NCBI GenBank assembly: GCA_051294905.1
Contig: CM119384.1
Coordinates: forward strand, 1,178,001 to 1,242,000
DNA: 64,000 bases
Direction: 5' to 3'
Source: Botryllus schlosseri
Lineage: Eukaryota
Shown here piece by piece: positions 3,110-47,900 of this stretch. Within the stretch, counting starts at the first letter, position 1, and each line of letters opens with the position of its first letter. The position numbers and the translations under genes are program-made. The notes beneath the pieces were generated by a model. That model was given only the letters and a program-made list of their open reading frames with translations. It ran no database searches and had not been told where the DNA came from.

Positions 3110-5776
3110 TCACGACATCAAACAAAGAGCAAGAGCCTCCAAGCTTAGAGGCACGCTGCCTCTGCTGACAAGATTCAGCATGATAACCCCCAAGAATTCG
3201 CTGCATTCTTTGTAGTCAGACTCTAATTTTTTCAATCCAAATTCGGACAGGGCGTGGATGTTCTTCCATTTCGAATGAACCGAAATTGCGAGATCAAATA
3301 TTTTTAACAAAGTGCCTTGAATCAACTTGTCACTTCGATTCTCTTCTTTCAAAAGACACAAGGAAAGCATACGCTCCAGAAAATTGTTGTGAGCGGTTAT
3401 TATGTCGTCGATGTTACGCACCGATTTCAGATTTTCCATGAATTCCTTTTTCTGCGATTCGATGACACTTGTCATTACAAAATTATGCCATTGCGATATC
3501 AAACCGAGCAGGCTAGAACGCAACAGGGAAAGACGGTGACATAGTGACGGTCTCTGTGGGAATTTAGGATTAAAAATGGTATCAAATCGCAACTGATGTA
3601 AGCAGAAAAGGGCACGTTTTAATTTTAGGATATAACAAAACAATATATTATAATCGTTTTTTGACTTGTTGGTGATTACAATATTGAGAGGCCAATTCAC
3701 GTCGATTATCAAATCAACGACGTCGGTAACATGAATCGATCCAGATTTGACTGGTTTAGTTTTATTGACTGCCACGGCGACGAATGTTAAGTCAGAATCA
3801 GGTTCACGATAAGAAATGGCTTCCTGCAGTGAAGCACGTAGCGACATTAAATCCATCCAGTACACGTCGCTGGATATTTTTTCGAACAAGGAACTACAAA
3901 AACTGTGCATCACGTCGCCCCATTCCATCAAATGAAATTTATGAAAATACCGAAACAATGAAATCAGGTCAAGCTCGACCATGAAAACGTTCACCAGAAC
4001 TTCATTGACGCGAGTCAATTTGGTTTGCACGATCTGCGAAATAGCTTTTTGAGTGGATTTGACGAAAGGAGTGCTTCCGCAAAATTGGAATTCGCAAGCA
4101 TAATTGACGTGACGATTCTCGTGAAACAGTTTTTCAAAATTTATCCGGAGCATAATATCAGTTGAGGATTCGACTTCTGGTGTGGAAATTTCCTCACTTT
4201 CCGGTTTTAGATTACAATTCGTCAACTTTTGTACAAAATCATCATGAATACTGACACAGTTGTAATTTTTCATGGGTTTACCAAGTGATTTCAATAATTC
4301 AACCGATTTTCCACAGACAACGACATCGTTTAGTACAGGTTTCAACCACGGAAGATACATCACACATTGATCGTCCGGCAAATAAAATGCACTTGTCCAA
4401 AACAGTTCACTTTTAATGTCACTATTAGAGCGCGGCCGTTGCAAAACAAACTCTTTCAACTCGTCCATCAACATTCCTGATGACATCCACCGATCCAAGA
4501 TTTCAAAATATGGCCGCAACGTATCAATCCAAATCTTGATCAAAGCATTTCTGAAGTTGCCAACTTCCAAAGCGTCTTTACTCATTTCATCCAAAATGAC
4601 GCGGTAAAGCACACCCAACAAACGACACGACTTGTGACAATATGAATCGGTTTCAATATCAAGGTCAACGCTACTCGTAAAAATACAATTGAGAACCTCA
4701 AGTTCATAGAACTTCGGCGCGAGTTTTTGCAGGATATCAGTCAAAAGGTATGATTTTTCCTGTAAAACCACCAAAGATTCTAATTGCTTTATGAAATTTT
4801 TAAACCCTGTAAAGTAGGCCAGCAAGCTTTCTGCGAACGCTTGGTAAGTTCGACATTCGACTGGTTTTCTGTTGAACACAAACTCATCTAATCTTCGAAC
4901 AATATCAGCATAGTGTGCAGCTTTTGTTAAGAATGAACTCAGTGATTTAGGTGTAACGTGCGTGCATAATATGTCCTTACGGACAGTATGTTTGCCATCA
5001 TTGTATGGAAATATATACAAATCTCGAACGCCTGATAAAGCCCAGAGAACTTCACGAATAATGTTTACTTCGCACAAATTTGATTCGATTGGAATGCTCA
5101 ACATATCATTGTTGGAATGAAATGTGACTGAAGATACATCACTTGTTTCGTTCCAATATTCCAACACTAAACAGGATCCTAACTCGTTTGCGTCGTACCG
5201 ATCATCTTTCACTGAGAGATCACCTGGCTGAACTGCTTCAACACAGCCATCCTTTGATGGGACAATTTTCACGTCTTCATCCTCAGAATGGCATGGAGTG
5301 TCTGAAAAAGCCCACTGTGATGGATAAGGCATTTCTTCTCCCTCCAACAGATATGCTTTCCAATCAAATTTTTCTTCTTCTGGGCTTAGCTTTGGTGGTG
5401 GAGGAATGTATTTTCTGTTTATAGGATTTTCTGACAACTCCAGAGCTAGAAGTAATACATCATAATGAACATTGCTCCTTGCTAAGCTGTTCTGAGACAA
5501 GTCGCAGTTAAGAAATCGTTTCTTAAATTCGGCCAAAAATTTCGCGTTTTCAGGATTGTTGTGTATGATAAACTTCTCGCAAATCCCGACAATTCTGCGA
5601 TCTATTTTGTTGCTGTCCGAAGCCATAAATCTTGAATTGCTGAATTGAGAGAGAGCGTATTCCCTGCATGTTTCGTGATTCTCTGACGATTCTTCGAAAT
5701 CCGTCAACTTGCTGACAAGCCGCGAGGTGGCCCTCGTTATTTTTTTCCGAAACTTCGGATTAGATGAAGTGAGCAT
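3110..5776 (-). CDS. TUBGCP5: Gamma-tubulin complex component 5-like (GCP5), single exon, 888 aa
   Basis: 888-aa ORF with GCP N-terminal helices (LLLALELSENP), GRIP1 start (IIREVLWALSG), WIDTLRPYFEILDRWM, and GRIP2 motifs (HLMEWGDVMHSF, VNWPLNIVI, LKLKRALFCL, DDIITAHNNFL). The GCP5 subfamily call is from recall. Confidence 0.88.
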   Translation of the reverse strand: MLTSSNPKFRKKITRATSRLVSKLTDFEESSENHETCREYALSQFSNSRFMASDSNKIDRRIVGICEKFIIHNNPENAKFLAEFKKRFLNCDLSQNSLARSNVHYDVLLLALELSENPINRKYIPPPPKLSPEEEKFDWKAYLLEGEEMPYPSQWAFSDTPCHSEDEDVKIVPSKDGCVEAVQPGDLSVKDDRYDANELGSCLVLEYWNETSDVSSVTFHSNNDMLSIPIESNLCEVNIIREVLWALSGVRDLYIFPYNDGKHTVRKDILCTHVTPKSLSSFLTKAAHYADIVRRLDEFVFNRKPVECRTYQAFAESLLAYFTGFKNFIKQLESLVVLQEKSYLLTDILQKLAPKFYELEVLNCIFTSSVDLDIETDSYCHKSCRLLGVLYRVILDEMSKDALEVGNFRNALIKIWIDTLRPYFEILDRWMSSGMLMDELKEFVLQRPRSNSDIKSELFWTSAFYLPDDQCVMYLPWLKPVLNDVVVCGKSVELLKSLGKPMKNYNCVSIHDDFVQKLTNCNLKPESEEISTPEVESSTDIMLRINFEKLFHENRHVNYACEFQFCGSTPFVKSTQKAISQIVQTKLTRVNEVLVNVFMVELDLISLFRYFHKFHLMEWGDVMHSFCSSLFEKISSDVYWMDLMSLRASLQEAISYREPDSDLTFVAVAVNKTKPVKSGSIHVTDVVDLIIDVNWPLNIVITNKSKNDYNILFCYILKLKRALFCLHQLRFDTIFNPKFPQRPSLCHRLSLLRSSLLGLISQWHNFVMTSVIESQKKEFMENLKSVRNIDDIITAHNNFLERMLSLCLLKEENRSDKLIQGTLLKIFDLAISVHSKWKNIHALSEFGLKKLESDYKECSEFLGVIMLNLVSRGSVPLSLEALALCLMS

Positions 5777-10126: not shown

Positions 10127-10705
10127 GTACATACCTTCTGCCCGGATGACAGCATTCAGCATTCAGCTTTCGGCTTGCCAGTATAACCGCTAGGCTAGCC
10201 GGTGCAGGGCAAGATGATGTAGCGTAGTTGGCGTAGATGGAAATAGATTGACAAATATTGCAATATGTATATGTATATAACAATATTTATGTGAATGTAA
10301 TGGATTTGGCATGCGTAGGCCTTGGCTGCCTATTAGGCCTTATTTGTTGAAGTTGTTGTGGTGGCGGTCGGTCAAACAATATGAAACAGGCGTATATAAA
10401 AATGAATGTATATATATACGAAGAAAAAAATAAAATGAACTTAATTAATTAGACCATACCGGAGCTTAATTTTCATGGACATCATTGGTAATAAAATTGA
10501 CTCTCCATTCCAACAGTTATTCTTGTATATTGCTCTATATAACATTGACGCAGAGTTTAGGGCCCCGTGGATACACTCAGCTATCGCAGCTATCGCAGCT
10601 CCCGCAGCTATCGCAGCTATCACTTGTGGATACACTCAGCTATCACAGCTATCGCAGCTATCACCAAAAATCGCAGACATACAGGTCAAATAAAGGTCAC
10701 GTATC

Positions 10706-11400
10706 GTTTAGGGCGCAGCTATCAGCTCCGGACCACGTCTGGGTTCAAATAGTGCGCAGCTATCAGCTTCGGAGCACGTCCGGGAGTAAATAGTGCGCAG
10801 CTATCAGCTCTGGAGCACGTCTGGGTTCAAATATTGCGCAGCTATCAGCTCCGGAGCACGCCCGGATGCAAATAGTGCGCTGCTATCAGCTCAAAAGCAC
10901 GTCTGGGTTCAAATAGTGCGCAGCTATCAGCTCCGGAGCACATCCGGGTTGAAAAAGTGCGCAGCTATCAGCTCCGGAGCACGCCCGGATGCAAATAGAG
11001 CGCTGCTATCAGCTCGAAAGCACGTCTGGGTTCAAATAGTGCGCAGCTATCAGTTCCGGAGCAAGTCTGAGTTGAAATAGTGCGCAGCTATCAGATCCGG
11101 AGCATGGCCGGGTTGAAATAGTGCGCAGCTATCAGCGCTGGAGCAAGTCCGGGTTGAAATAGTGCGCAGCTATCAGCTCAGAATCACGTCTCGGTTCAAA
11201 TAGTGAGCAGCTATCAGCGCTGGAGCTTGTCTGGGTTGAAATAGTGCGCAGCTATCAAATCCGGGGCACGTCTCAGTTGAAATAGTGCGCAGCTATCAGC
11301 CCCGGAGCACGTCCAGGTTGAAATAGTGCGCAGCTATCAGCTCTGGAGCAAGTCCGGATGCAAATAGTGCGCAGATATCAGCTCCAGAGCACGTCTGGGC
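10706..11400 (+). repeat. 41-bp tandem array, 17 units (left arm of the fold-back element)
   Basis: Consensus AAATAGTGCGCAGCTATCAGCTCCGGAGCACGTCYGGGTTS. Unit starts are exactly 41 nt apart from 10747 to 11362. Confidence 0.95.
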
Positions 11401-11421
11401 CAGTGTTGGGATGACTCGAGT

Positions 11422-11976
11422 CAGGGTTGTAACCAAGTCACAAGGCTCCGAGTCACAAGTCACTCTCACTTTTATAGTTTTAAATCGATTCCAGTGAAGT
11501 CATTTTCAATTCGCCACCGAGTCAATTCCGAGTCCAAGTCATCGAGCAGAGGTTCGAGTCCGAGTCATGGTATTATGACTCGAGTCCGAGTCCAAGTTAT
11601 CCTGTTGATGTGTTGACTGCTCGTTTTCCATTTAAAGTTTTGTTAAACCCAATTTCTATAACTCGCTTTGGTGATATCGAATGGTTCGCATTCATAATAT
11701 ACTAATTTTCCTCACTTTTAAATGTTTCTGGTCGCATTTTCAAGTATCAGTAACAATAGGATGGTTAATTTACAATTCTTCGAAATTTCAATGAAATGTC
11801 AGTCTTGGCCGTGTAAGTCTCGAGTCATATGACTTGGTTCGAGTCACGTGCAATTACACATATAGACTCGAGTCGAGTCGAGTCATTTCCGTATTTTGAG
11901 AAAATGACTTGAGTCAAGTCGAGTCATCAGAAAATGGTGACTTGAGTCAATAAATGATCGATTGATTACAACCCTG
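11422..11976. mobile_element. hAT-type MITE, family B (GACTCGAGTC-rich), nested in the fold-back element
   Basis: TIR CAGGGTTGTAA; TSD ACTCGAGT / ACTCTAGT. Confidence 0.85.
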
Positions 11977-12905
11977 ACTCTAGTCATGACTCGGATGTTG
12001 AATTTGGTTCAATTCCAACCAGTAGCCGCATTGCTACAGGAGAAGAAAGATTCTATTTATTATATAAAAATAAATAACAAAAAATTTGAAAATTTTCTGT
12101 TCACCCCATGAAAGTGTTAGGTTGTCTATGGAAACGATGTTCACCAAATTTGGTTCAATTCCAATCAGTGGAAGCGGAGTTATTGCCGTCGAAAAATTTG
12201 GATTTGAATAAAATAGTATTTACGATTATTTACTATAATAAATAATTAAAGAAATAATCACCGTAAATACTATTTTATTCATAATCAAAATTTTTCGAAG
12301 GCAATAACCCCGCTGTAATCATTATGTAAAACGTGAGACTTTCGTTTCATCCAATCACGGATATATTTCATAAAAATATGTTTGAATCAGGCTTGTTGGC
12401 ACGTACCCTTATACATGGAATGTGCAGCGGCTTCATTTACTCATAGTAGTTTGATATAGTTCCCAGGCGAGTAGGTCTCCGAGCTATATTTTATTCATGA
12501 TATACCAATCAAAGTAACACACCCTGGTGCACTAGTATCGAAATATTGTCTTTGGGCCGTGCATTATATTAATTAGATACGTATAAGGCCCGTGTAGTGA
12601 GTATATAGGCCTCAATATACTATACCTGCAGTCGCACACGTCCGATATCAGATCAGTGAATATCTATGATAGGCAGAGCCGTTAGTAGGGAAGGCCTACA
12701 CTACATCCACGGAATCGCACAGGTGTTAGTCAATATTATAACAAATATATATTTACAGCTGCATAATTATTCGTAAGTAGAGCTTTCAATACAAAGTAAC
12801 GAAATTTCTTTTGATCCCGTGTGGATGTCACAATATCTGTTCCCCGCCTGTACACTGAAAATCAGGAAGATAGTCCTTGCATGCAATGTAATGAATGAAT
12901 TCGAG

Positions 12906-13640
12906 TCCACAGGTGCTCCTGAGCTGACAGCTGCGCACTATTTCAATCAGGACGTGGTCCTGAGCTGATAGCTGCGCACTATTTCAACCCGGACTACCTC
13001 TGGAGCTGATAGCTGCGCACTATTTCAACCCAGACGTGCTCCAAAGCTGATAGCTGCGCACTATTTCAACCCGGACTACCTCTGGAGCTGATAGCTGCGC
13101 ACTATTTCAACCCAGACGTGCTCCAAAGCTGATAGCTGCGCACTATTTCAACCCGGACTACCTCTGGAGCTGATAGCTGCGCACTATTTCAACCCAGACG
13201 TGCTCCAAAGCTGATAGCTGCGCACTATTTCAACCCAGACGTGCTCCAAAGCTGATAGCTGCGCACTATTTGCATCCGGACTTGCTCCGGAGCTGATAGC
13301 TGCGCACTATTTCAACTCAGACTTGCTCCGGAACTGATAGCTGCGCACTATTTGAACCCAGACGTGCTTTTGAGCTGATAGCTGCGCACTATTTCAACCC
13401 GGACGTGCTCCGGAGCTGATAGCTGCGCACTATTTGAACCCAGACGTGCTTTTGAGCTGATAGCTGCGCACTATTTGCATCCGGGCGTGCTCCGGAGCTG
13501 ATAGCTGCGCACTATTTCAACCCAGACGTGCTCCAGAGCTGATAGTTGCGCACTATTTCATCCCGGACGTGCTCCGAAGCTGATAGCTGCGCACTATTTG
13601 AACCCAAACGTGCTCCAGAGCTGATAGCTGCGCCCTAAAC
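12906..13640 (-). repeat. 41-bp tandem array, 18 units (right arm, reverse complement)
   Basis: CACTATTT recurs every 41 nt from 12943 to 13599, plus a terminal GCGCCCTAAA unit. Confidence 0.95.
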
Positions 13641-13799
13641 GATACGTGACCTTTAAATGACCTGTATGTCTGCGATTTTTGGTGATAGCTGCGATAGCTG
13701 TGATAGCTGAGTATATCCACAAGTGATAGCTGCGATAGCTGAGTATATCCACAAGTGATAGCTGCGGGAGCTGCGATAGCTGAGTATATCCACGGGGCC

Positions 13800-13823
13800 A
13801 GTTTAGCATATAAATAGATAAAA
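13800..13823 (+). promoter_or_regulatory. Putative 3' splice or trans-splice acceptor and short AT-rich 5' UTR of TAF6
   Basis: GTTTAG at 13801-13806, followed by 17 nt to the ATG. Confidence 0.45.
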
Positions 13824-24458
<10,635 letters not shown>

Positions 24459-29931: not shown

Positions 29932-32900
29932 ATGTCGTCTGAAATGGACACATCCACCGCGGCACCCACAGAATGTGATGCCGAGAAAAGCACTATCGAC
30001 TGTGACATGGACTTAGAGAGCGATTCAATGTGTTTGGACACGCACGTCGATCTCAACGACGACAAAAGCCAAGCTGTTGATGTCCCAGACTCTTCAAAAA
30101 TGGCGACAGGAAATAGTCGAAACGGCAGCGTGTTCAAACTTCAAATGGCTAAGAGCGACAGTGTGCCATTGGCGGACGAATCCGACAATAGGCAGTCACT
30201 TGAAATGAGCAATACCACCACTGAAACGTGCCCGAACGAAGCATTCAAACTGTCTCCCCCTGTCTTCATAAACTCCGAAACGTTTCAAAAGAATTTACTG
30301 GACGACAGCCCATTCCAAAAGCCGACTGTGTGCAGAACTCATAGCGTTGGGTCCGGCGATCCATCTCCGTACGCGATAAGGCGTCGGCCTGGCAAATTGG
30401 CGTTTCCGAATCAAACCAGAAGCCCGTCGGCGTTCAAACGGAAACTCAACATATCGTCACAGTTGAAGTTTGATGATGTGTTGGGCGATAGTGACTTGAA
30501 AAGATGTAACAGCGCCCCGATGCTGAATGATATGAAGTAAGACAATTAATATTTAATTTAATTATTTCTGTTAAGAGAGGCTTTTGCGTTGTTGTCAATT
30601 CGGGCATATGTAGGTTTTATTCTATTAAACCTATTGAGCATTGGCTCGCTATATTTAATGGTGAAATTTCGGTGAGTATCCGATCACTAAAACGTGCCTT
30701 CTGTGCTGACGAATCCCAATTAGATTACCCATACTAGACTGCGTATGGCATAGGCCTTCGCTCATTTACACGTGAACATATGGCATTGCAGTTACGGCAA
30801 AATCAAGTACCGGTATCTGATTGAATGGGTTGGTGCCATTAATGAAAAATGTTTAAAATTCAAATATGAAAATGAGTATCTTTTATCCTACGACATATAA
30901 TATAATCTATCACGTCACGTCAAAGATAATTTGGTATTTTTTTGACCATGCGTATTTTTTTTTGCACTGGGCTGATCACGATTTCACAGATATGTCATCT
31001 CCACTAATGTGTGTAACTTAGTACTACATGTTTCGTATGCTGTGATTCTACCAATTGAAATTTCACGGTTTTCAGAGTTGAAATGCTATCGAAATTATAA
31101 TTTTCATCGATGAATCAACTCCAAGTGGCGAAATCGTATAATTTCAGTACCAGGAAGAATCGTCTCTCACTACGTGACTTAAATCTTTAGAATACTCGAT
31201 TCAGATTTGAGTACCCAAATCATTGTGCCTAGCTCTAATTGTAGCCAGACATGGGGTGATTACTTCACGAATGTAATCGATTGCGATTACGATTACTTGT
31301 GAGTCCCGCGATTACGATTACGATTACGATTACAGCAAAATCAGGAAGTAGTCGATTACGATTACGATTACATTTCAAAAGTAATCACGATTACTCACGA
31401 TTATATTTGTTTTGCTTCTTAGAACTAATTTCAGAAGAGATATTGGAAGACAATATAAGGCTTGCAATGAAAAGGTCAAATGAATAACAACTTTCTTTAT
31501 AAATTATACGTAATTTGCTTGTTACGTCATAATGCACCCATTGCCCAACTCTATGCAGGACTATTCGTCGCCCGTAACGATTTGCATTCTTACCAGGTCC
31601 GTAACTGTCACACTCAAAACTCCCCAATAGGACCGAGAGCGAGCTCTAAGAGGACTCAAAAGTACTTCGTCAGTCAACATAAATTATTATAGAGTATTTT
31701 CAAGAGAGTTAATTAACTTGAAAATTTTCTTCGAGCTTCGGGATTTAATGTCTTTAAATAGCTTGATTTTGAAATGCATACCTCTCCCCCTCAAGAAAAA
31801 AAAAGCATGCATAATTTATAGGAATAGGCATTTCGGTGGCGGTCATTGCCCCGCCACAACACACCAAAAGAAGTATGCAATTTCGGCCAACATTCAACTC
31901 CACAAAGTGTGCTACCAAAGAATGACCTTGGCCAAAACGAAATTCAGTCATCAACTTTAAAACTGGCCACCCTATGGGGCTCCAATACCCAGGGTTGTAA
32001 TGACTCGAGTCATGACTCGACTCGAGTCCGACTCGAGTTGCGATTTGTTGGTGACTAGACTTAACTCGAGTCATTTTTTCAAATGCGCAAATTAACTCGA
32101 CTCGATTTTGCATGACTCGAACCAAGTCATATGACTCGAGATTAGAACGGCCAAGACAGACATTCCATGTAACTTCGAAGAATAGTAAAGTTACGGCATT
32201 ATTTGTATTTCGTCTATCAGTCCTGATACTTGGAAATAGGGCCGTAAACTGTGAAAACTGATGAAAATTACTATATTATGAATACGAGCCATTCTATTTC
32301 ACTCGAGCAAAGTTGAAAAAAGTGGGTTGAACCGGATTGATCTGAAACTGATCTGTGTACATAACGACTTGGACTCATACTCGAGTCAAACACTATGATT
32401 CTAACTCAACCCTAAACTAGCTGACTTGGACTCGGACTTGACTCGGGGGTGAATTGAAAATGACTCGACTTGACTCGAGTCAAAACTATAAAAGTGAGAT
32501 TGACTTGTGACTCGGAACATTTTGACTTGGTTACTACCTTACCAATACCAACGTTTGGAGTGCGGGACGAATTGCTGTTTTGGTCCTGATTGTACCAACA
32601 GCCCACGCTAACATGGTGTATAAGCGGATGGCTATGGCGACAGGTATAAATGTCGAGTGAAGAATTCTGAAATAACGATTGGCGCCCGTTTCAAGTAGAG
32701 TCATATGAGAATAAGATAAAGTGAACTTACAATTGTACCTTCCACTTAATACAGATACTGCAAGCTGCCGTTACGAGAAACGGCAAAGAACGGTTATGAT
32801 ATATCTCAGCAGCTGTTGATTTTGACCATCGTAATGTTTTATTTAACGAGTACAAAATTTCAAATCTTTGTCCGGTGTACGTACAATACATACGTATACT

Positions 32901-44900: not shown

Positions 44901-47900
44901 AGGGTGCTAAAAACTTCTGCAACATAGCTTCCCATGTTACAAAAGCTTTCTAATACACAATTCGTAACCTTGTACTATCTTTGCTACAACAAAATGCATG
45001 TTTTGCACATCTGGGAATGCTCGGTGATGATGATGAAGGCCTCAGACTTGCAAAACTACAACTATGAGCAGATCAAACAGAATATCAGATTCCAATTGAC
45101 GACTTAGGAGGATATGTTAATGAACCGAAACCTAAAAACAACGTTGACACTAGAATCACATTGTTCAAAATCCCAATTATAAACATCAATGCCAAATCAT
45201 ACCACCAAACTGTCAACTTGCATCTAAAAGATGCGGAACAGCCACCAGCAATCAAAAACTAAAAGATGCAGAACAGCCACCAGCAATCAAAAAAACTTTT
45301 CATATCTCGAGCTGGAAAATCTAAGGTCATGACAATTAGTGATAAATCATCCTTGGCACAATCAGGCAGTGGAAACAGACGTTAAAGTGGTGACCGAAGC
45401 ATATGCCCATTGCCCATGTGTCGGGATTTGAACGTAGAGATGGCCTCATCACACAAAAACTGAAATCTCGAAAGCAGATGTAATCCTTTATTACGAAACA
45501 AAATTTTAAAGTTTGTGCATACTAATACTCTGGCAGTGAAACCATATTTGAAATATATCTTTTTTATTATAGAATTGATGTTTTAGTGTTTTCAATATGA
45601 AAGTGCAATTTATGTGCTTTTAATAAGGAGTTGTCAGTCATAAGATCAATCACTACAAGCTTTTGGCATCATAGCCCCTGCTTCAGTGCCTAATTTTACC
45701 TAAAAACAGCCTAAAAATCAATAATTTGCTTGTAACTTTTTTTCTGTTCATTTTTAAGACAAAGTTCTGTGGAAGTGAAATAGAAACTTGTTGCTTCCGC
45801 ATCTTTTAAGCCCAAAACCAGCTTTCCAGCATAAGCGGTAATCAATATATAGCAAAATTGGCTATTTTTGGCTCATTCGGTGCAATTGCACGACCACTAG
45901 AGGGTGCACGAGCGCAAAATTATTATAGAAATTATTTTTTTTCAATTTGGCACCACATATCAAGTGTCCGTTTTGAAATTCAAAATTTTCCATTTTTCAC
46001 TCCACCCTAATGCTATGGTGAAGCAACATCAACCATTAGGCCTACTGACAATGACACCAAATATAAATTAGTCATCTTGGAAAGCCTATGATACATGAAT
46101 TAGTTTTTTGGATTTGGGTGCTCTTGGTACTATTTTGAGTTTTTTTTTCAAATAACGAAAGCATGGGCAGTGGGCACTTCAGCAACACATAATTGCAATA
46201 ATAGTCTTTTAACCATACCAAAAGAGTATGTGGATAATTGAAACTAATAAAGGTGGCTCTTGAAGTAGTCATATCCTTTCAGCTGGCGCGGAAGTGTAGA
46301 GCTGTTTATATCGGAGTTTGGTAACTAGAAAATTTTCAGATTTTCGAAATGTGATTAGAATCAGTATTAGGCTACTGAATTCGCAAAAAACTTGGAAATG
46401 GATTTAATTTTCCGAAAGAAATACCTACAACAAAAATCAACTTCAGTTCGTAACAAATCATAAATAATTCTCATGAACATGAGAACGGCCAATGTCTGTA
46501 CACCGAGCTTGACTCGACTAGAGCTATCTACTTATCTGAGTCTGGTTGTATGCTAATGATTGTCAATGATTGATTGTCAACTATCTCTTTCCAGTCTGAT
46601 GGCACAATCGGCTCAATATCTGGGAGCGGGGACGGACCTCATCTACAGACTCCACTGTCCGATCAAACCATGCCCCGGTCTCCGTTGCCTGCAACTAATC
46701 CTGTTTCAGTGCCATGTAAGTTATTTTTCTTAGTAAGTGCTACTGTACTGTGCAAGGTCCATGTATATTGGACAATATGTGGAAAAAGGGGCAGTTTTCT
46801 GCTAAAGGGAGTTGAAGGTCACTGAGAACGGGTAATTTTTGGTACAGGATTAGGGTTACTATTTGAGTTATGACGTCCCATGCTCAATTGTAGTTTTTCA
46901 TTGTGTCACACGTTCGAGTCGGGGAAACCCACTTTTAATTACATGTATGCCTATTGCCTACTATCAAGGATCGATTGAGTTCTTATAGTTTATATGTTTT
47001 TTTCCTGATGTGGAAGCAAATGCTGTAAAGTGGAAATTATATTTCTGTGAAGTGGTCCAATGAAGTAGGTATGGTTCAATCAGAGATTTTCTGATGACTC
47101 GACTTGACTCGAGTCATTTTTTCAAAATAGGGAAATGACTCGAGTCATTGCGCATGACTCGAACCAAGTCATATGACTCGAGACTCAGACGGCCAAGACC
47201 GACATTTCATTGTAATTTCAAAGAATAGTTACGAAACCACATTATGGTGGTTTCGTCTATTGGTGCTGGTACTTGAAAATGCCACCAGACACTGCTAAAA
47301 GTGAGGCAAATTAGTATGTTATATGCGAACCATTCGATATCACCAAACAGACTTATGAAAAGTAGGTTTAATAAGGCTTTAACTGGAAACTAAGCAGTCA
47401 ACACAATGACTTGGACTCGGACTCGAGTCATAATACCGTGACACGGACTCGACCGTCTGCTCGCCGACTTGGACTCTGACTTGACTCGAGTCAAAACTAT
47501 AAAAGTGAGATTGACTTGTGACTCAGAGCCTTGTTACTTGGTTACAACCCTGGGTTGAAAAAAAACAACTTATCTTTACGTGGCGCAGAAATGGCATTGT
47601 ATCTTTGTGGTCGCACAAATTTACCTCTTGTAACGTCATGAGTAATAATTTAATACTCGAAATCGAATGACTCAAGCACTCGATTTTGCCCAGCCTTATG
47701 TTTCCTCCTTTTCAATCGTGTGTGCCGAATGTTTTTGACATGTTCTTGTGTTTTTCAGATGGTAACAAGTCAAGTTCAAATCGGGCGATCGATTTCTCCA
47801 CAACCAATCCGCAACGAGCCCACCATTCATCAGGGGGAGGCGTACCGTCGCCCTTGACGATATCGACGGGCCCCCTCAATCTATCACCCCTACCTCCCTC

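What the first reader, a model, noticed from the sequence alone, without database searches (positions are those of the whole stretch)
10554..13826. 3.2-kb fold-back element whose 7-bp TSD duplicates the acceptor just before the TAF6 ATG
Seen: modular TIRs (outer CAGCTATC repeats, 46-bp spacer, 17 or 18 x 41-bp array), GGCC termini, and the direct repeat AGTTTAG. The right copy's AG is 17 nt before the ATG, and the element ends 24 nt before the ATG of an essential gene. Known: modular tandem-repeat TIRs typify Drosophila FB and Galileo (7-bp TSD, but CA termini). Inference: GGCC ends with a 7-bp TSD fit no superfamily I can name. The insertion separates the acceptor from its former upstream sequence, leaves a decoy AG at 10560, and would place a roughly 850-bp stem in any transcript starting upstream.
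Basis: partly seen in the sequence, partly recalled or inferred. Interest (0 to 1): 0.7.

Follow-up and report, generated by a model that had tools for sequence, protein, structure and literature searches.

The report
Mutator-type fold-back transposon beside TAF6
A 3.2-kb hairpin-shaped jumping gene sits 24 bases in front of the start codon of a sea squirt's TAF6 gene; it has no enzyme gene of its own and is an ordinary member of a family of roughly 85 copies of the well-known Mutator (MULE) kind, and its effect on TAF6 remains untested.

Summary
The structure is real. The element runs 10561-13799 (3,239 bp). It has GGCCCCGTGGATA termini, 9-bp CAGCTATCR repeats, a spacer, and 41-bp arrays of 16.9 and 17.7 units. 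AGTTTAG flanks it on both sides. It ends 24 nt before the TAF6 ATG.

The claim that it fits no superfamily does not hold.
- The genome holds 171 such termini (control 0).
- Of 17 paired copies, 9 have 8-bp TSDs, 5 have 9-bp, 2 have none, and only this one has 7 bp.
- Larger copies with the same 41-bp arrays carry decayed transposase genes.
- Intact sibling elements share the GGCCCYGTGGATAT terminus, have 8- or 9-bp TSDs, and encode about 1,000-aa proteins.
- Pfam, fold search, protein-atlas look-alikes and a conserved DDE plus C(2)H motif all place these proteins in Mutator/MULE. Fold hits include FAR1/FHY3, Drosophila NOF-FB and IS256/ISCth4.

So this is a non-autonomous fold-back MULE, closest in behaviour to Aedes Muta1, which also mixes 8- and 9-bp TSDs.

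On TAF6, one spliced RNA contig starts exactly at the AG of the right repeat. One DNA contig stops matching exactly at the element boundary. These suggest use of that acceptor and a possible empty allele, but prove neither.

The scan had noted other MULE/fold-back transposases in this genome. A word search of its notes found none for this family.

The parts
10554..10560 (+). Left copy of the flanking direct repeat AGTTTAG (target-site duplication, 7 bp in this copy)
   Evidence: exact 7/7 match with 13800-13806; it does not extend to 8 or 9 bp.
10561..10708 (+). Left terminal module: GGCCCCGTGGATACACTCAGCTATC terminus, two GTGGATA + 9-bp CAGCTATCR repeat blocks, and a spacer of about 46 bp
   Evidence: The spacer differs at 2 of 63 positions from the family consensus.
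10709..11399 (+). Left array of 16.9 x 41-bp units; each unit contains one CAGCTATCA motif and the palindrome GCTCCGGAGC
   Evidence: (TRF score 885) and the sequence.
11400..12912 (.). Non-coding interior with no transposase. 11400-11879 is 96.7% identical to copy L019. 11422-11950 is a GAGTC-rich repeat also found elsewhere. 12312-12900 is 92% identical to the region next to an array in transposase-bearing copy L032.
   Evidence: (no long ORF).
12913..13637 (-). Right array of 17.7 x 41-bp units, inverted relative to the left array
   Evidence: TRF score 1023.
13638..13799 (-). Right terminal module: spacer, three GTGGATA + 9-bp repeat blocks, and the terminus ...CCACGGGGCC
   Evidence: The spacer has 0 of 63 mismatches to the family consensus.
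13800..13806 (+). Right copy of AGTTTAG. Its AG (13805-13806) is the candidate trans-splice acceptor, 17 nt before the ATG.
   Evidence: The spliced RNA contig of run X6 starts at 13805. The contig of run X11 stops matching at 13800.
13824..14009 (+). TAF6 exon 1 coding part (62 codons); later exons at 14288-14359 and 14867-15035
   Evidence: Pfam PF02969, E 4.3e-11. Splice junctions read and borne out by RNA contig record 17. Single copy in the assembly.

Best explanation
This is a non-autonomous, internally deleted fold-back transposon of the Mutator (MULE) superfamily.

Inferred mechanism, by analogy with Aedes Muta1. A MULE transposase made elsewhere binds the 9-bp CAGCTATCR motif. That motif is repeated next to each terminus and once in every 41-bp unit. 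The enzyme cuts at the GGCC... termini and joins the ends to staggered nicks 8 or 9 bp apart. Here the stagger was 7 bp.

Shown. This copy landed in AGTTTAG, 24 nt upstream of the TAF6 ATG. All transposase genes of its own subfamily seen in this assembly are decayed. Sibling elements share the terminal 14 nt and have intact genes of about 1,000 codons (PHD, OTU-like and MULE DDE domains).

Inferred. The most likely reason an essential gene tolerates the insertion is that mature TAF6 mRNA starts at the AG of the right repeat, by spliced-leader trans-splicing. Everything upstream, hairpin included, would then be discarded. Alternatively, the insertion is a polymorphic allele.
For: Family and TSD:
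- 171 termini against 0 in the control.
- 17 paired copies: 8 bp in 9, 9 bp in 5, 7 bp in 1, none in 2.

Transposase link:
- Copy L037 has the same 41-bp unit (about 50 and 38 units) around decayed ORFs.
- L032, L040 and a copy on C10 hold the same ORF.
- Sibling L054 has the GGCCCTGTGGATAT terminus, 9-bp repeats, an 8-bp TSD and a 1,003-aa ORF. Sibling L053 has the same terminus, a 9-bp TSD and a 1,048-aa ORF.

Superfamily:
- Pfam MULE, E 1.3e-4, covering profile positions 3-99 of 99.
- Homologues P0001-P0004 carry PF10551.
- Invariant D283, D352, E471 and C373 of a C(2)H motif.
- Foldseek hits: FAR1/FHY3/FRS (E 1e-11), K. lactis alpha3, Drosophila NOF-FB protein P16320 (E 4.7e-8, query 1-593), ZSWIM1/3/9, IS256-family transposases, and PDB ISCth4.
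- The protein-atlas nearest clusters are all MULE.

Binding motif: subfamily L040 changes CAGCTATC to CAGATATC in both the subterminal repeats and the 41-mers.

Precedent:
- Muta1 gives mixed 8- and 9-bp TSDs, and its subterminal repeats strengthen binding and cleavage (PMC5225508, PMC5499845).
- Tm1 is a Mutator/Foldback family with 8-10-bp TSDs (PMC3169594).

TAF6: the spliced RNA contig starts at 13805.
Against: - The Pfam MULE hits are below the gathering score (22.7 against 27.6 bits).
- The structure model is of moderate quality (pLDDT 70.6, TM about 0.35).
- This copy's 7-bp TSD lies outside the 8-11 bp usual for MULEs.
- No intact transposase of the exact subfamily was found. Cross-mobilisation by siblings (53% identity, different 9-mers) is untested.
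- The trans-splicing part rests on one contig end and on earlier unchecked scan notes that this is a trans-splicing ascidian. A Ciona-type leader pattern is essentially absent from the genome.
- No read was seen crossing 13799/13800.
Confidence: 0.85

Rival explanations
1. The element belongs to a Galileo/P-like superfamily, or to an unnamed one, defined by 7-bp TSDs and GGCC ends.
For: This copy has an exact 7-bp flanking repeat. Its modular TIRs resemble those of Galileo (general knowledge, and PMC3169594).
Against: Only 1 of 17 paired copies has 7 bp; 14 have 8 or 9 bp. The internal ORFs and intact siblings are MULE by Pfam, fold and atlas. No P/THAP-like ORF was seen in any copy.
Confidence: 0.03
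2. The MULE genes in the large copies are unrelated nested insertions. The fold-back itself would then be moved by another 8-bp-TSD superfamily such as hAT or Merlin.
For: An 8-bp TSD fits hAT, and 8-9 bp with GG ends fits Merlin (general knowledge). Hermes appears weakly in the PDB fold search (E 4.6e-3).
Against: Intact siblings L053 and L054 carry the homologous ORF directly between GGCCCTGTGGATAT termini with 9- or 8-bp TSDs. At least four copies of this family hold the ORF. No second set of TIRs was seen around the ORF. IS256/ISCth4 and MULE-derived proteins outrank Hermes.
Confidence: 0.05
3. TAF6 is not trans-spliced at this AG. Transcription starts at or just inside the right end of the element, from an outward-reading promoter as described for maize Mu1 at hcf106 (recalled from general knowledge, not checked here).
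For: The RNA contig begins at 13805, only 6 nt beyond the element end, with no leader letters before it. A dead end of coverage at a transcription start would look the same.
Against: The contig start coincides exactly with the first base of the predicted AG. That is what a branch between spliced and unspliced forms would give in a k-mer assembly, and intron depth of 2-8 shows unspliced or DNA reads are present. In raw RNA run X24, TAF6 exon reads have their first mate on +. Few such reads (1.2 against 11.7 for first mate on -) cover the last 73 nt of the element, and 15 of 22 reads at 13793 carry a variant of other copies. Depth is too low to be decisive.
Confidence: 0.2
4. The structure is an assembly artefact, for example a collapsed or chimeric repeat.
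For: Long inverted arrays are hard to assemble. I could not lay reads on the arrays or on the left junction.
Against: Both ends are complete, and an exact duplication of unique flank brackets them. Copies of 3-15 kb with the same build and their own TSDs occur on most of the large contigs, C1 to C16. The interior matches other copies at 92-97%.
Confidence: 0.02

Closest known systems
Muta1 (Aedes aegypti), an active 'type 2 foldback' MULE (PMC5225508, PMC5499845)
   Same: It has a short terminal motif followed by subterminal tandem repeats. It gives a mixture of 8- and 9-bp TSDs with no target consensus. It has hundreds of non-autonomous derivatives with variable repeat numbers, and a DDE plus C/D(2)H transposase. 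Its insertions favour gene-rich regions.
   Different: Muta1 TIRs are 145 bp, with nine 12-bp repeats. Here the arms are about 840-890 bp, with a second tier of 41-bp units. The transposase of about 1,000 aa carries weak PHD and OTU-like hits at its N-terminus. This copy has a 7-bp TSD. No activity has been shown.
Drosophila FB / FB-NOF (120.7 kDa NOF protein, P16320)
   Same: Fold-back arms are built of tandem repeats. The NOF protein is a structural match over the whole 593-aa query (Foldseek E 4.7e-8). Reviews group it with Mutator (cited in PMC3169594).
   Different: FB has a 9-bp TSD (general knowledge). Sequence identity is about 11%. Clade membership (NOF, Rehavkus or classical MULE) was not resolved here.
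Tm1 of root-knot nematodes (PMC3169594)
   Same: It is a Mutator/Foldback family with composite TIRs of tandem repeats and 8-10-bp TSDs. Most copies are non-autonomous and the transposase copies are decaying.
   Different: Tm1 has a Phantom-type transposase with a FLYWCH finger, asymmetric 7-bp end motifs and 14-bp repeats.
Rehavkus group (Repbase; PMC6446971, Table 1)
   Same: [quoted passage not shown]
   Different: The group is known from arthropods and annelids. The PHD hit here is weak (E 1.7e-3) and N-terminal. No sequence comparison with Rehavkus was possible.
Galileo (P superfamily fold-back, Drosophila)
   Same: It has long modular TIRs, and its 7-bp TSD matches this single copy.
   Different: The family TSD here is 8 or 9 bp, the transposase is MULE rather than P/THAP, and the termini differ.

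Membership tests
Mutator / MULE superfamily | DDE transposase with the MULE domain (RNase H fold related to IS256) | tested here: met
   Pfam PF10551 E 1.3e-4 to 2.8e-4 over profile positions 3-99 of 99, below the gathering score. Homologues carry PF10551. Foldseek top hits are all MULE-derived or IS256-family, and the PDB hit is ISCth4. Atlas clusters are all MULE. The test was made on intact siblings 53% identical to this family's decayed ORF.
Mutator / MULE superfamily | Conserved D, D, E triad with a C/D(2)H motif after the second D | tested here: met
   Invariant D283, D352, E471 and C373 in nine sequences. The motifs read DKTYN, GTDDE, H-LC--H and TNNNCE--N.
Mutator / MULE superfamily | TSD of 8-11 bp (PMC6446971) | tested here: met
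   For the family: 8 bp in 9 and 9 bp in 5 of 17 pairs. Siblings have 8 and 9 bp. The window copy itself has 7 bp, outside the range.
Mutator / MULE superfamily | Long TIRs (tens to hundreds of bp) | tested here: met
   The arms are about 840 and 890 bp. The inverted repeat is 791 nt at 89%.
Fold-back elements of the MULE type (FB-NOF, Muta1-like) | TIRs made of subterminal tandem repeats able to fold back | tested here: met
   9-bp repeats and 41-bp arrays in both arms. The same build is seen in L037 and L040.
Fold-back elements of the MULE type (FB-NOF, Muta1-like) | Transposase in the NOF clade specifically | tested here: inconclusive
   NOF-FB P16320 is a full-length structural hit (E 4.7e-8), but it ranks below FAR1-type proteins. 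No phylogeny with reference sequences was possible.
Rehavkus group | PHD finger in the transposase plus minisatellite arrays | tested here: inconclusive
   PHD PF00628 E 1.7e-3, below the cut-off, at residues 6-55 of the L053 ORF. Arrays are present. No reference sequences were available.
P superfamily (Galileo) | 7-bp TSD across the family and a P/THAP-type transposase | tested here: not met
   Only 1 of 17 copies has 7 bp. The internal ORFs are MULE.
hAT / Merlin | hAT or IS1016-like transposase between the ends | tested here: not met
   No such Pfam hit. Hermes appears only at E 4.6e-3, behind ISCth4.
Spliced-leader trans-spliced gene (TAF6) | Leader sequence joined at the AG (13806/13807) in mature mRNA | tested here: inconclusive
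   A spliced RNA contig starts exactly at 13805, but no leader letters were seen. Raw-read depth on exon 1 was under 1. The leader of this species was not determined; a Ciona-type pattern is absent.

The most novel reading that the evidence does not exclude
TAF6 is transcribed from a promoter upstream of the element, so the primary transcript carries the arms of about 850 bp as a long hairpin. Spliced-leader trans-splicing at the AG regenerated by the target duplication rescues the mRNA. The discarded upstream piece then becomes a constitutive double-stranded RNA source that silences this MULE family, a natural counterpart of maize Mu killer driven by a housekeeping promoter.
Probability: 0.1. 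Interest if true: 0.6.

Novelty: new member of a known kind. Interest (0 to 1): 0.3.

Why it matters
The main value is as annotation. It names a family of about 85 or more copies, with intact sibling elements, of fold-back Mutator-like transposons in a sea-squirt genome. A broad survey of MULEs found only one chordate sequence, from Ciona savignyi (PMC6446971).

The family offers a clean natural series. The terminal 14 nt are conserved, while the 9-mer changes between subfamilies in step in the subterminal repeats and in the 41-bp arrays. This could be used to test how subterminal repeats guide MULE transposases.

The insertion 24 nt before the ATG of a single-copy general transcription factor gene is a neat test case. 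It could show whether trans-splicing lets genes tolerate large insertions in front of the coding region. No effect on TAF6 has been shown.

Tried and rejected
- Empty site in the assembly: a 32-nt pattern of left flank, one AGTTTAG and right flank, at up to 3 mismatches, gave no hit. TAF6 exon 1 is single copy, so no alternative haplotype is available.
- Other individuals' contigs: exact-product look-ups of the 73-aa exon-1 ORF and of the 888-aa upstream GCP gene found nothing on record.
The arrays and the left junction were therefore not examined. The loose-end table was cut off, so the 57 unmatched letters of the X11 contig could not be read.
- Ciona-type spliced leader plus GT: one hit at one mismatch. 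The leader here differs or was recalled wrongly, so I dropped it.
- Profile of the transposase against PDB sequences: nothing.
- Paper search for ascidian + foldback + transposon: no paper.
- TSD consensus: none is evident among 15 TSDs. Only 2 of them end in TAG, so I do not claim that the family targets acceptors.
- Merlin was my first guess, from GG ends and 8-9-bp TSDs. I rejected it once the ORFs proved to be MULE.
Full report
**What is there.** AGTTTAG lies at 10554-10560 and again at 13800-13806. Between them is a 3,239-bp element (10561-13799). Its two ends are inverted copies of GGCCCCGTGGATA(C/T)A(C/T)TCAGCTATC.

Going inward from each end there are:
- blocks of GTGGATA plus 9-bp CAGCTATCR repeats, two on the left and three on the right;
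- a spacer of about 46 bp;
- an array of 41-bp units: 10709-11399 (16.9 copies) and 12913-13637 (17.7 copies).

The longest in-register inverted repeat is 791 nt at 89%. Each 41-bp unit contains one CAGCTATCA motif and the palindrome GCTCCGGAGC. The interior (11400-12912) has no long ORF.

The ATG at 13824 opens an exon whose product matches the TAF6-type histone fold (PF02969, E 4.3e-11), and exon 2 continues the same profile. The nearest upstream gene is a gamma-tubulin complex component on the minus strand, with its ATG at 5776. The element therefore lies in an 8-kb divergent intergenic region, 24 nt before the TAF6 ATG.

**It is a family, and its TSD is not 7 bp.** The 25-nt terminus occurs 171 times in the 495-Mb assembly at up to 2 mismatches, against 0 for the reversed control. 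Termini pair up into elements of about 1 to 16 kb. I could read both flanks of 17 pairs:

| TSD | Pairs |
|---|---|
| 8 bp | 9 (one with a single mismatch) |
| 9 bp | 5 |
| 7 bp | 1 (the window copy) |
| none | 2 |

The 9-bp cases are true 9-mers, not 8-mers extended by chance, because they fail at register 8. No target consensus is visible.

The 63-nt spacer differs from the family consensus at a median of 2 positions. In the window copy it differs at 2 (left) and 0 (right) positions. The family is therefore fairly young.

**The partner is a Mutator-type transposase.**
- Larger copies carry pieces of one ORF family: L037 (7.7 kb), L032 (7.7 kb), L040 (6.0 kb) and a copy on C10.
- L037 has the very same 41-bp unit as the window copy, about 50 units on one side and 38 on the other, around the ORF remnants.
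- The window's interior matches the array-adjacent parts of these copies at 92-97%. It is therefore an internal-deletion derivative.
- All ORFs of this subfamily that I saw are broken by stops or frameshifts.

The same genome holds intact siblings:
- L054 (4.9 kb) has the GGCCCTGTGGATAT terminus, 9-bp CGCAGTTCA repeats, an 8-bp TSD and a 1,003-aa ORF.
- L053 (8.6 kb) has the same terminus, CAGCTGTAT repeats, a 9-bp TSD and a 1,048-aa ORF.
- Their proteins are 53% identical to the decayed ORF of the window's family.

Five lines of evidence place these proteins in the Mutator/MULE superfamily:
- Pfam MULE covers profile positions 3-99 of 99 at E 1.3e-4. This is below the gathering score.
- The few database homologues (27-32% identity) carry PF10551.
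- A nine-sequence alignment keeps D283, D352, E471 and the C of a C(2)H motif invariant.
- An AlphaFold model (pLDDT 70.6) hits only MULE-derived or IS256-type proteins. These are FAR1/FHY3/FRS, K. lactis alpha3, the Drosophila NOF-FB 120.7-kDa protein over the full query, ZSWIM1/3/9, IS256-family transposases, and ISCth4 in the PDB.
- The protein-atlas look-alikes are all MULE clusters.

The N-terminal 450 residues of the L053 protein give weak PHD and OTU-protease hits.

**How it probably works.** A sister subfamily (L040) has CAGATATC in place of CAGCTATC. The change appears both in the subterminal 9-mers and inside its 41-bp units. This co-variation is what one expects if the 9-mer is the transposase binding site, so the arrays would be stacks of binding sites.

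For Aedes Muta1, more subterminal repeats strengthen transposase binding and cleavage. Insertion there gives a mixture of 8- and 9-bp TSDs without target preference (PMC5499845, PMC5225508). The mixture here is the same. Fold-back TIRs with MULE transposases are well documented: Muta1, Tm1 (PMC3169594), FARE and FB-NOF.

I therefore file the element as a non-autonomous fold-back MULE. The mechanism is inferred by analogy and has not been shown. The 7-bp TSD of this copy is an outlier that I cannot explain further. An 8-bp reading needs both a mismatch and a truncated end.

**What it means for TAF6.** The pre-insertion sequence would read ...cattgacgcag-AGTTTAG-catataaatagataaaaATG. It has a branch-point-like ttgac just upstream, which now lies 3.2 kb away.

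Earlier notes of this scan call the genome a stolidobranch ascidian with spliced-leader trans-splicing. I did not verify this.

I could lay reads once, and only on 13638-16300. Four things came out of it.
- In run X6, a 446-nt contig joins 13805-14009 to exons 2 and 3. It is therefore spliced RNA, and it starts exactly at the A of the AG in the right repeat. Introns are covered at lower depth, so unspliced or DNA reads are also present. A k-mer assembly breaks exactly where a leader-bearing form and an unspliced form diverge. The result therefore fits trans-splicing at 13806/13807, but a transcription start near 13805 would look alike.
- In run X11 (low-depth DNA, filed under another organism code), a 259-nt contig matches 13800-14001 without a mismatch. 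Its other 57 letters do not match the stretch.
  - If those letters lie on the left, the match ends exactly at the element boundary, as an empty allele would give.
  - The table does not show the letters or their side, so this is only suggestive.
- In raw RNA run X24, TAF6 exon 1 depth was below 1. Most reads on the last 73 nt of the element carry a variant of other copies.
- No read or contig crossing 13799/13800 was listed.

Whether the hairpin is ever part of a TAF6 transcript therefore remains open. The assembly holds no second TAF6 exon 1 and no empty site.

**Verdict.** The proposed effect on TAF6 is plausible but undemonstrated.

This is a new member of a known kind. It has modest added interest because MULEs are sparsely documented in chordates (PMC6446971) and because of where it sits. 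The scan had already noted other MULE/fold-back transposases in this genome. One of them was a PHD + OTU + MULE fusion like the sibling protein I saw. A word search of the notes for this family returned nothing.

Noticed in passing
L053:4552-7695 and L054:4649-7657 (own genome, C6 and C12): Intact sibling transposases of about 1,000 aa. They combine a weak N-terminal PHD finger hit, weak OTU/otubain-like protease hits and the MULE DDE domain. L053 also has a 147-bp coding tandem repeat (2.5 copies).
   Followed up: partly
window 11422-11950; also 18764-19139, 20739-21126, 32030-32538, 47086-47552: A GAGTC-rich repeat of about 530 bp sits inside this element and at the same relative place in many other copies. 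It also occurs on its own elsewhere in the window and in flanks of other loci. It is either captured by the fold-back family or a separate MITE.
   Followed up: partly
window 16011-16300 (TAF6 intron region): An extremely abundant short repeat, with summed contig depth up to about 2 million in run X2. Several X2 contigs skip 135-180 bp between about 16011 and 16191. This suggests presence/absence polymorphism of a small element.
   Followed up: no
L007, L015, L029, L037 and other loci (arms of other copies): In many copies the whole outer module (terminus-like GTGGATA block, spacer and a few 41-mers) is itself repeated 2-5 times per arm. The arms therefore contain internal copies of the terminal motif, which are possible alternative cleavage sites.
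   Followed up: partly
L040 (own genome C1:7456805-7463012): A sister subfamily in which the 9-mer is CAGATATC instead of CAGCTATC. The change appears both in the subterminal repeats and inside the 41-bp units, so the two repeat tiers co-vary.
   Followed up: partly
L010/L011 and L035 (own genome C2 and C1): Two apparent end pairs have no target-site duplication. They may be two separate elements, or the product of recombination between copies of the kind fold-back elements are known to cause.
   Followed up: no
window 3110-5776, minus strand: The upstream divergent neighbour is a gamma-tubulin complex component read as a single 888-codon ORF without introns, while TAF6 next to it is split into many short exons.
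   Followed up: no
L056 (own genome C5:5216000-5225900) and at least five other places: A more distant MULE family (37% identity) has identical 1,055-codon open frames at several places (same score, 195.1 bits) and looks recently active. A 9-bp AAGCTAATG array of about 95 units lies beside the ORF.
   Followed up: no
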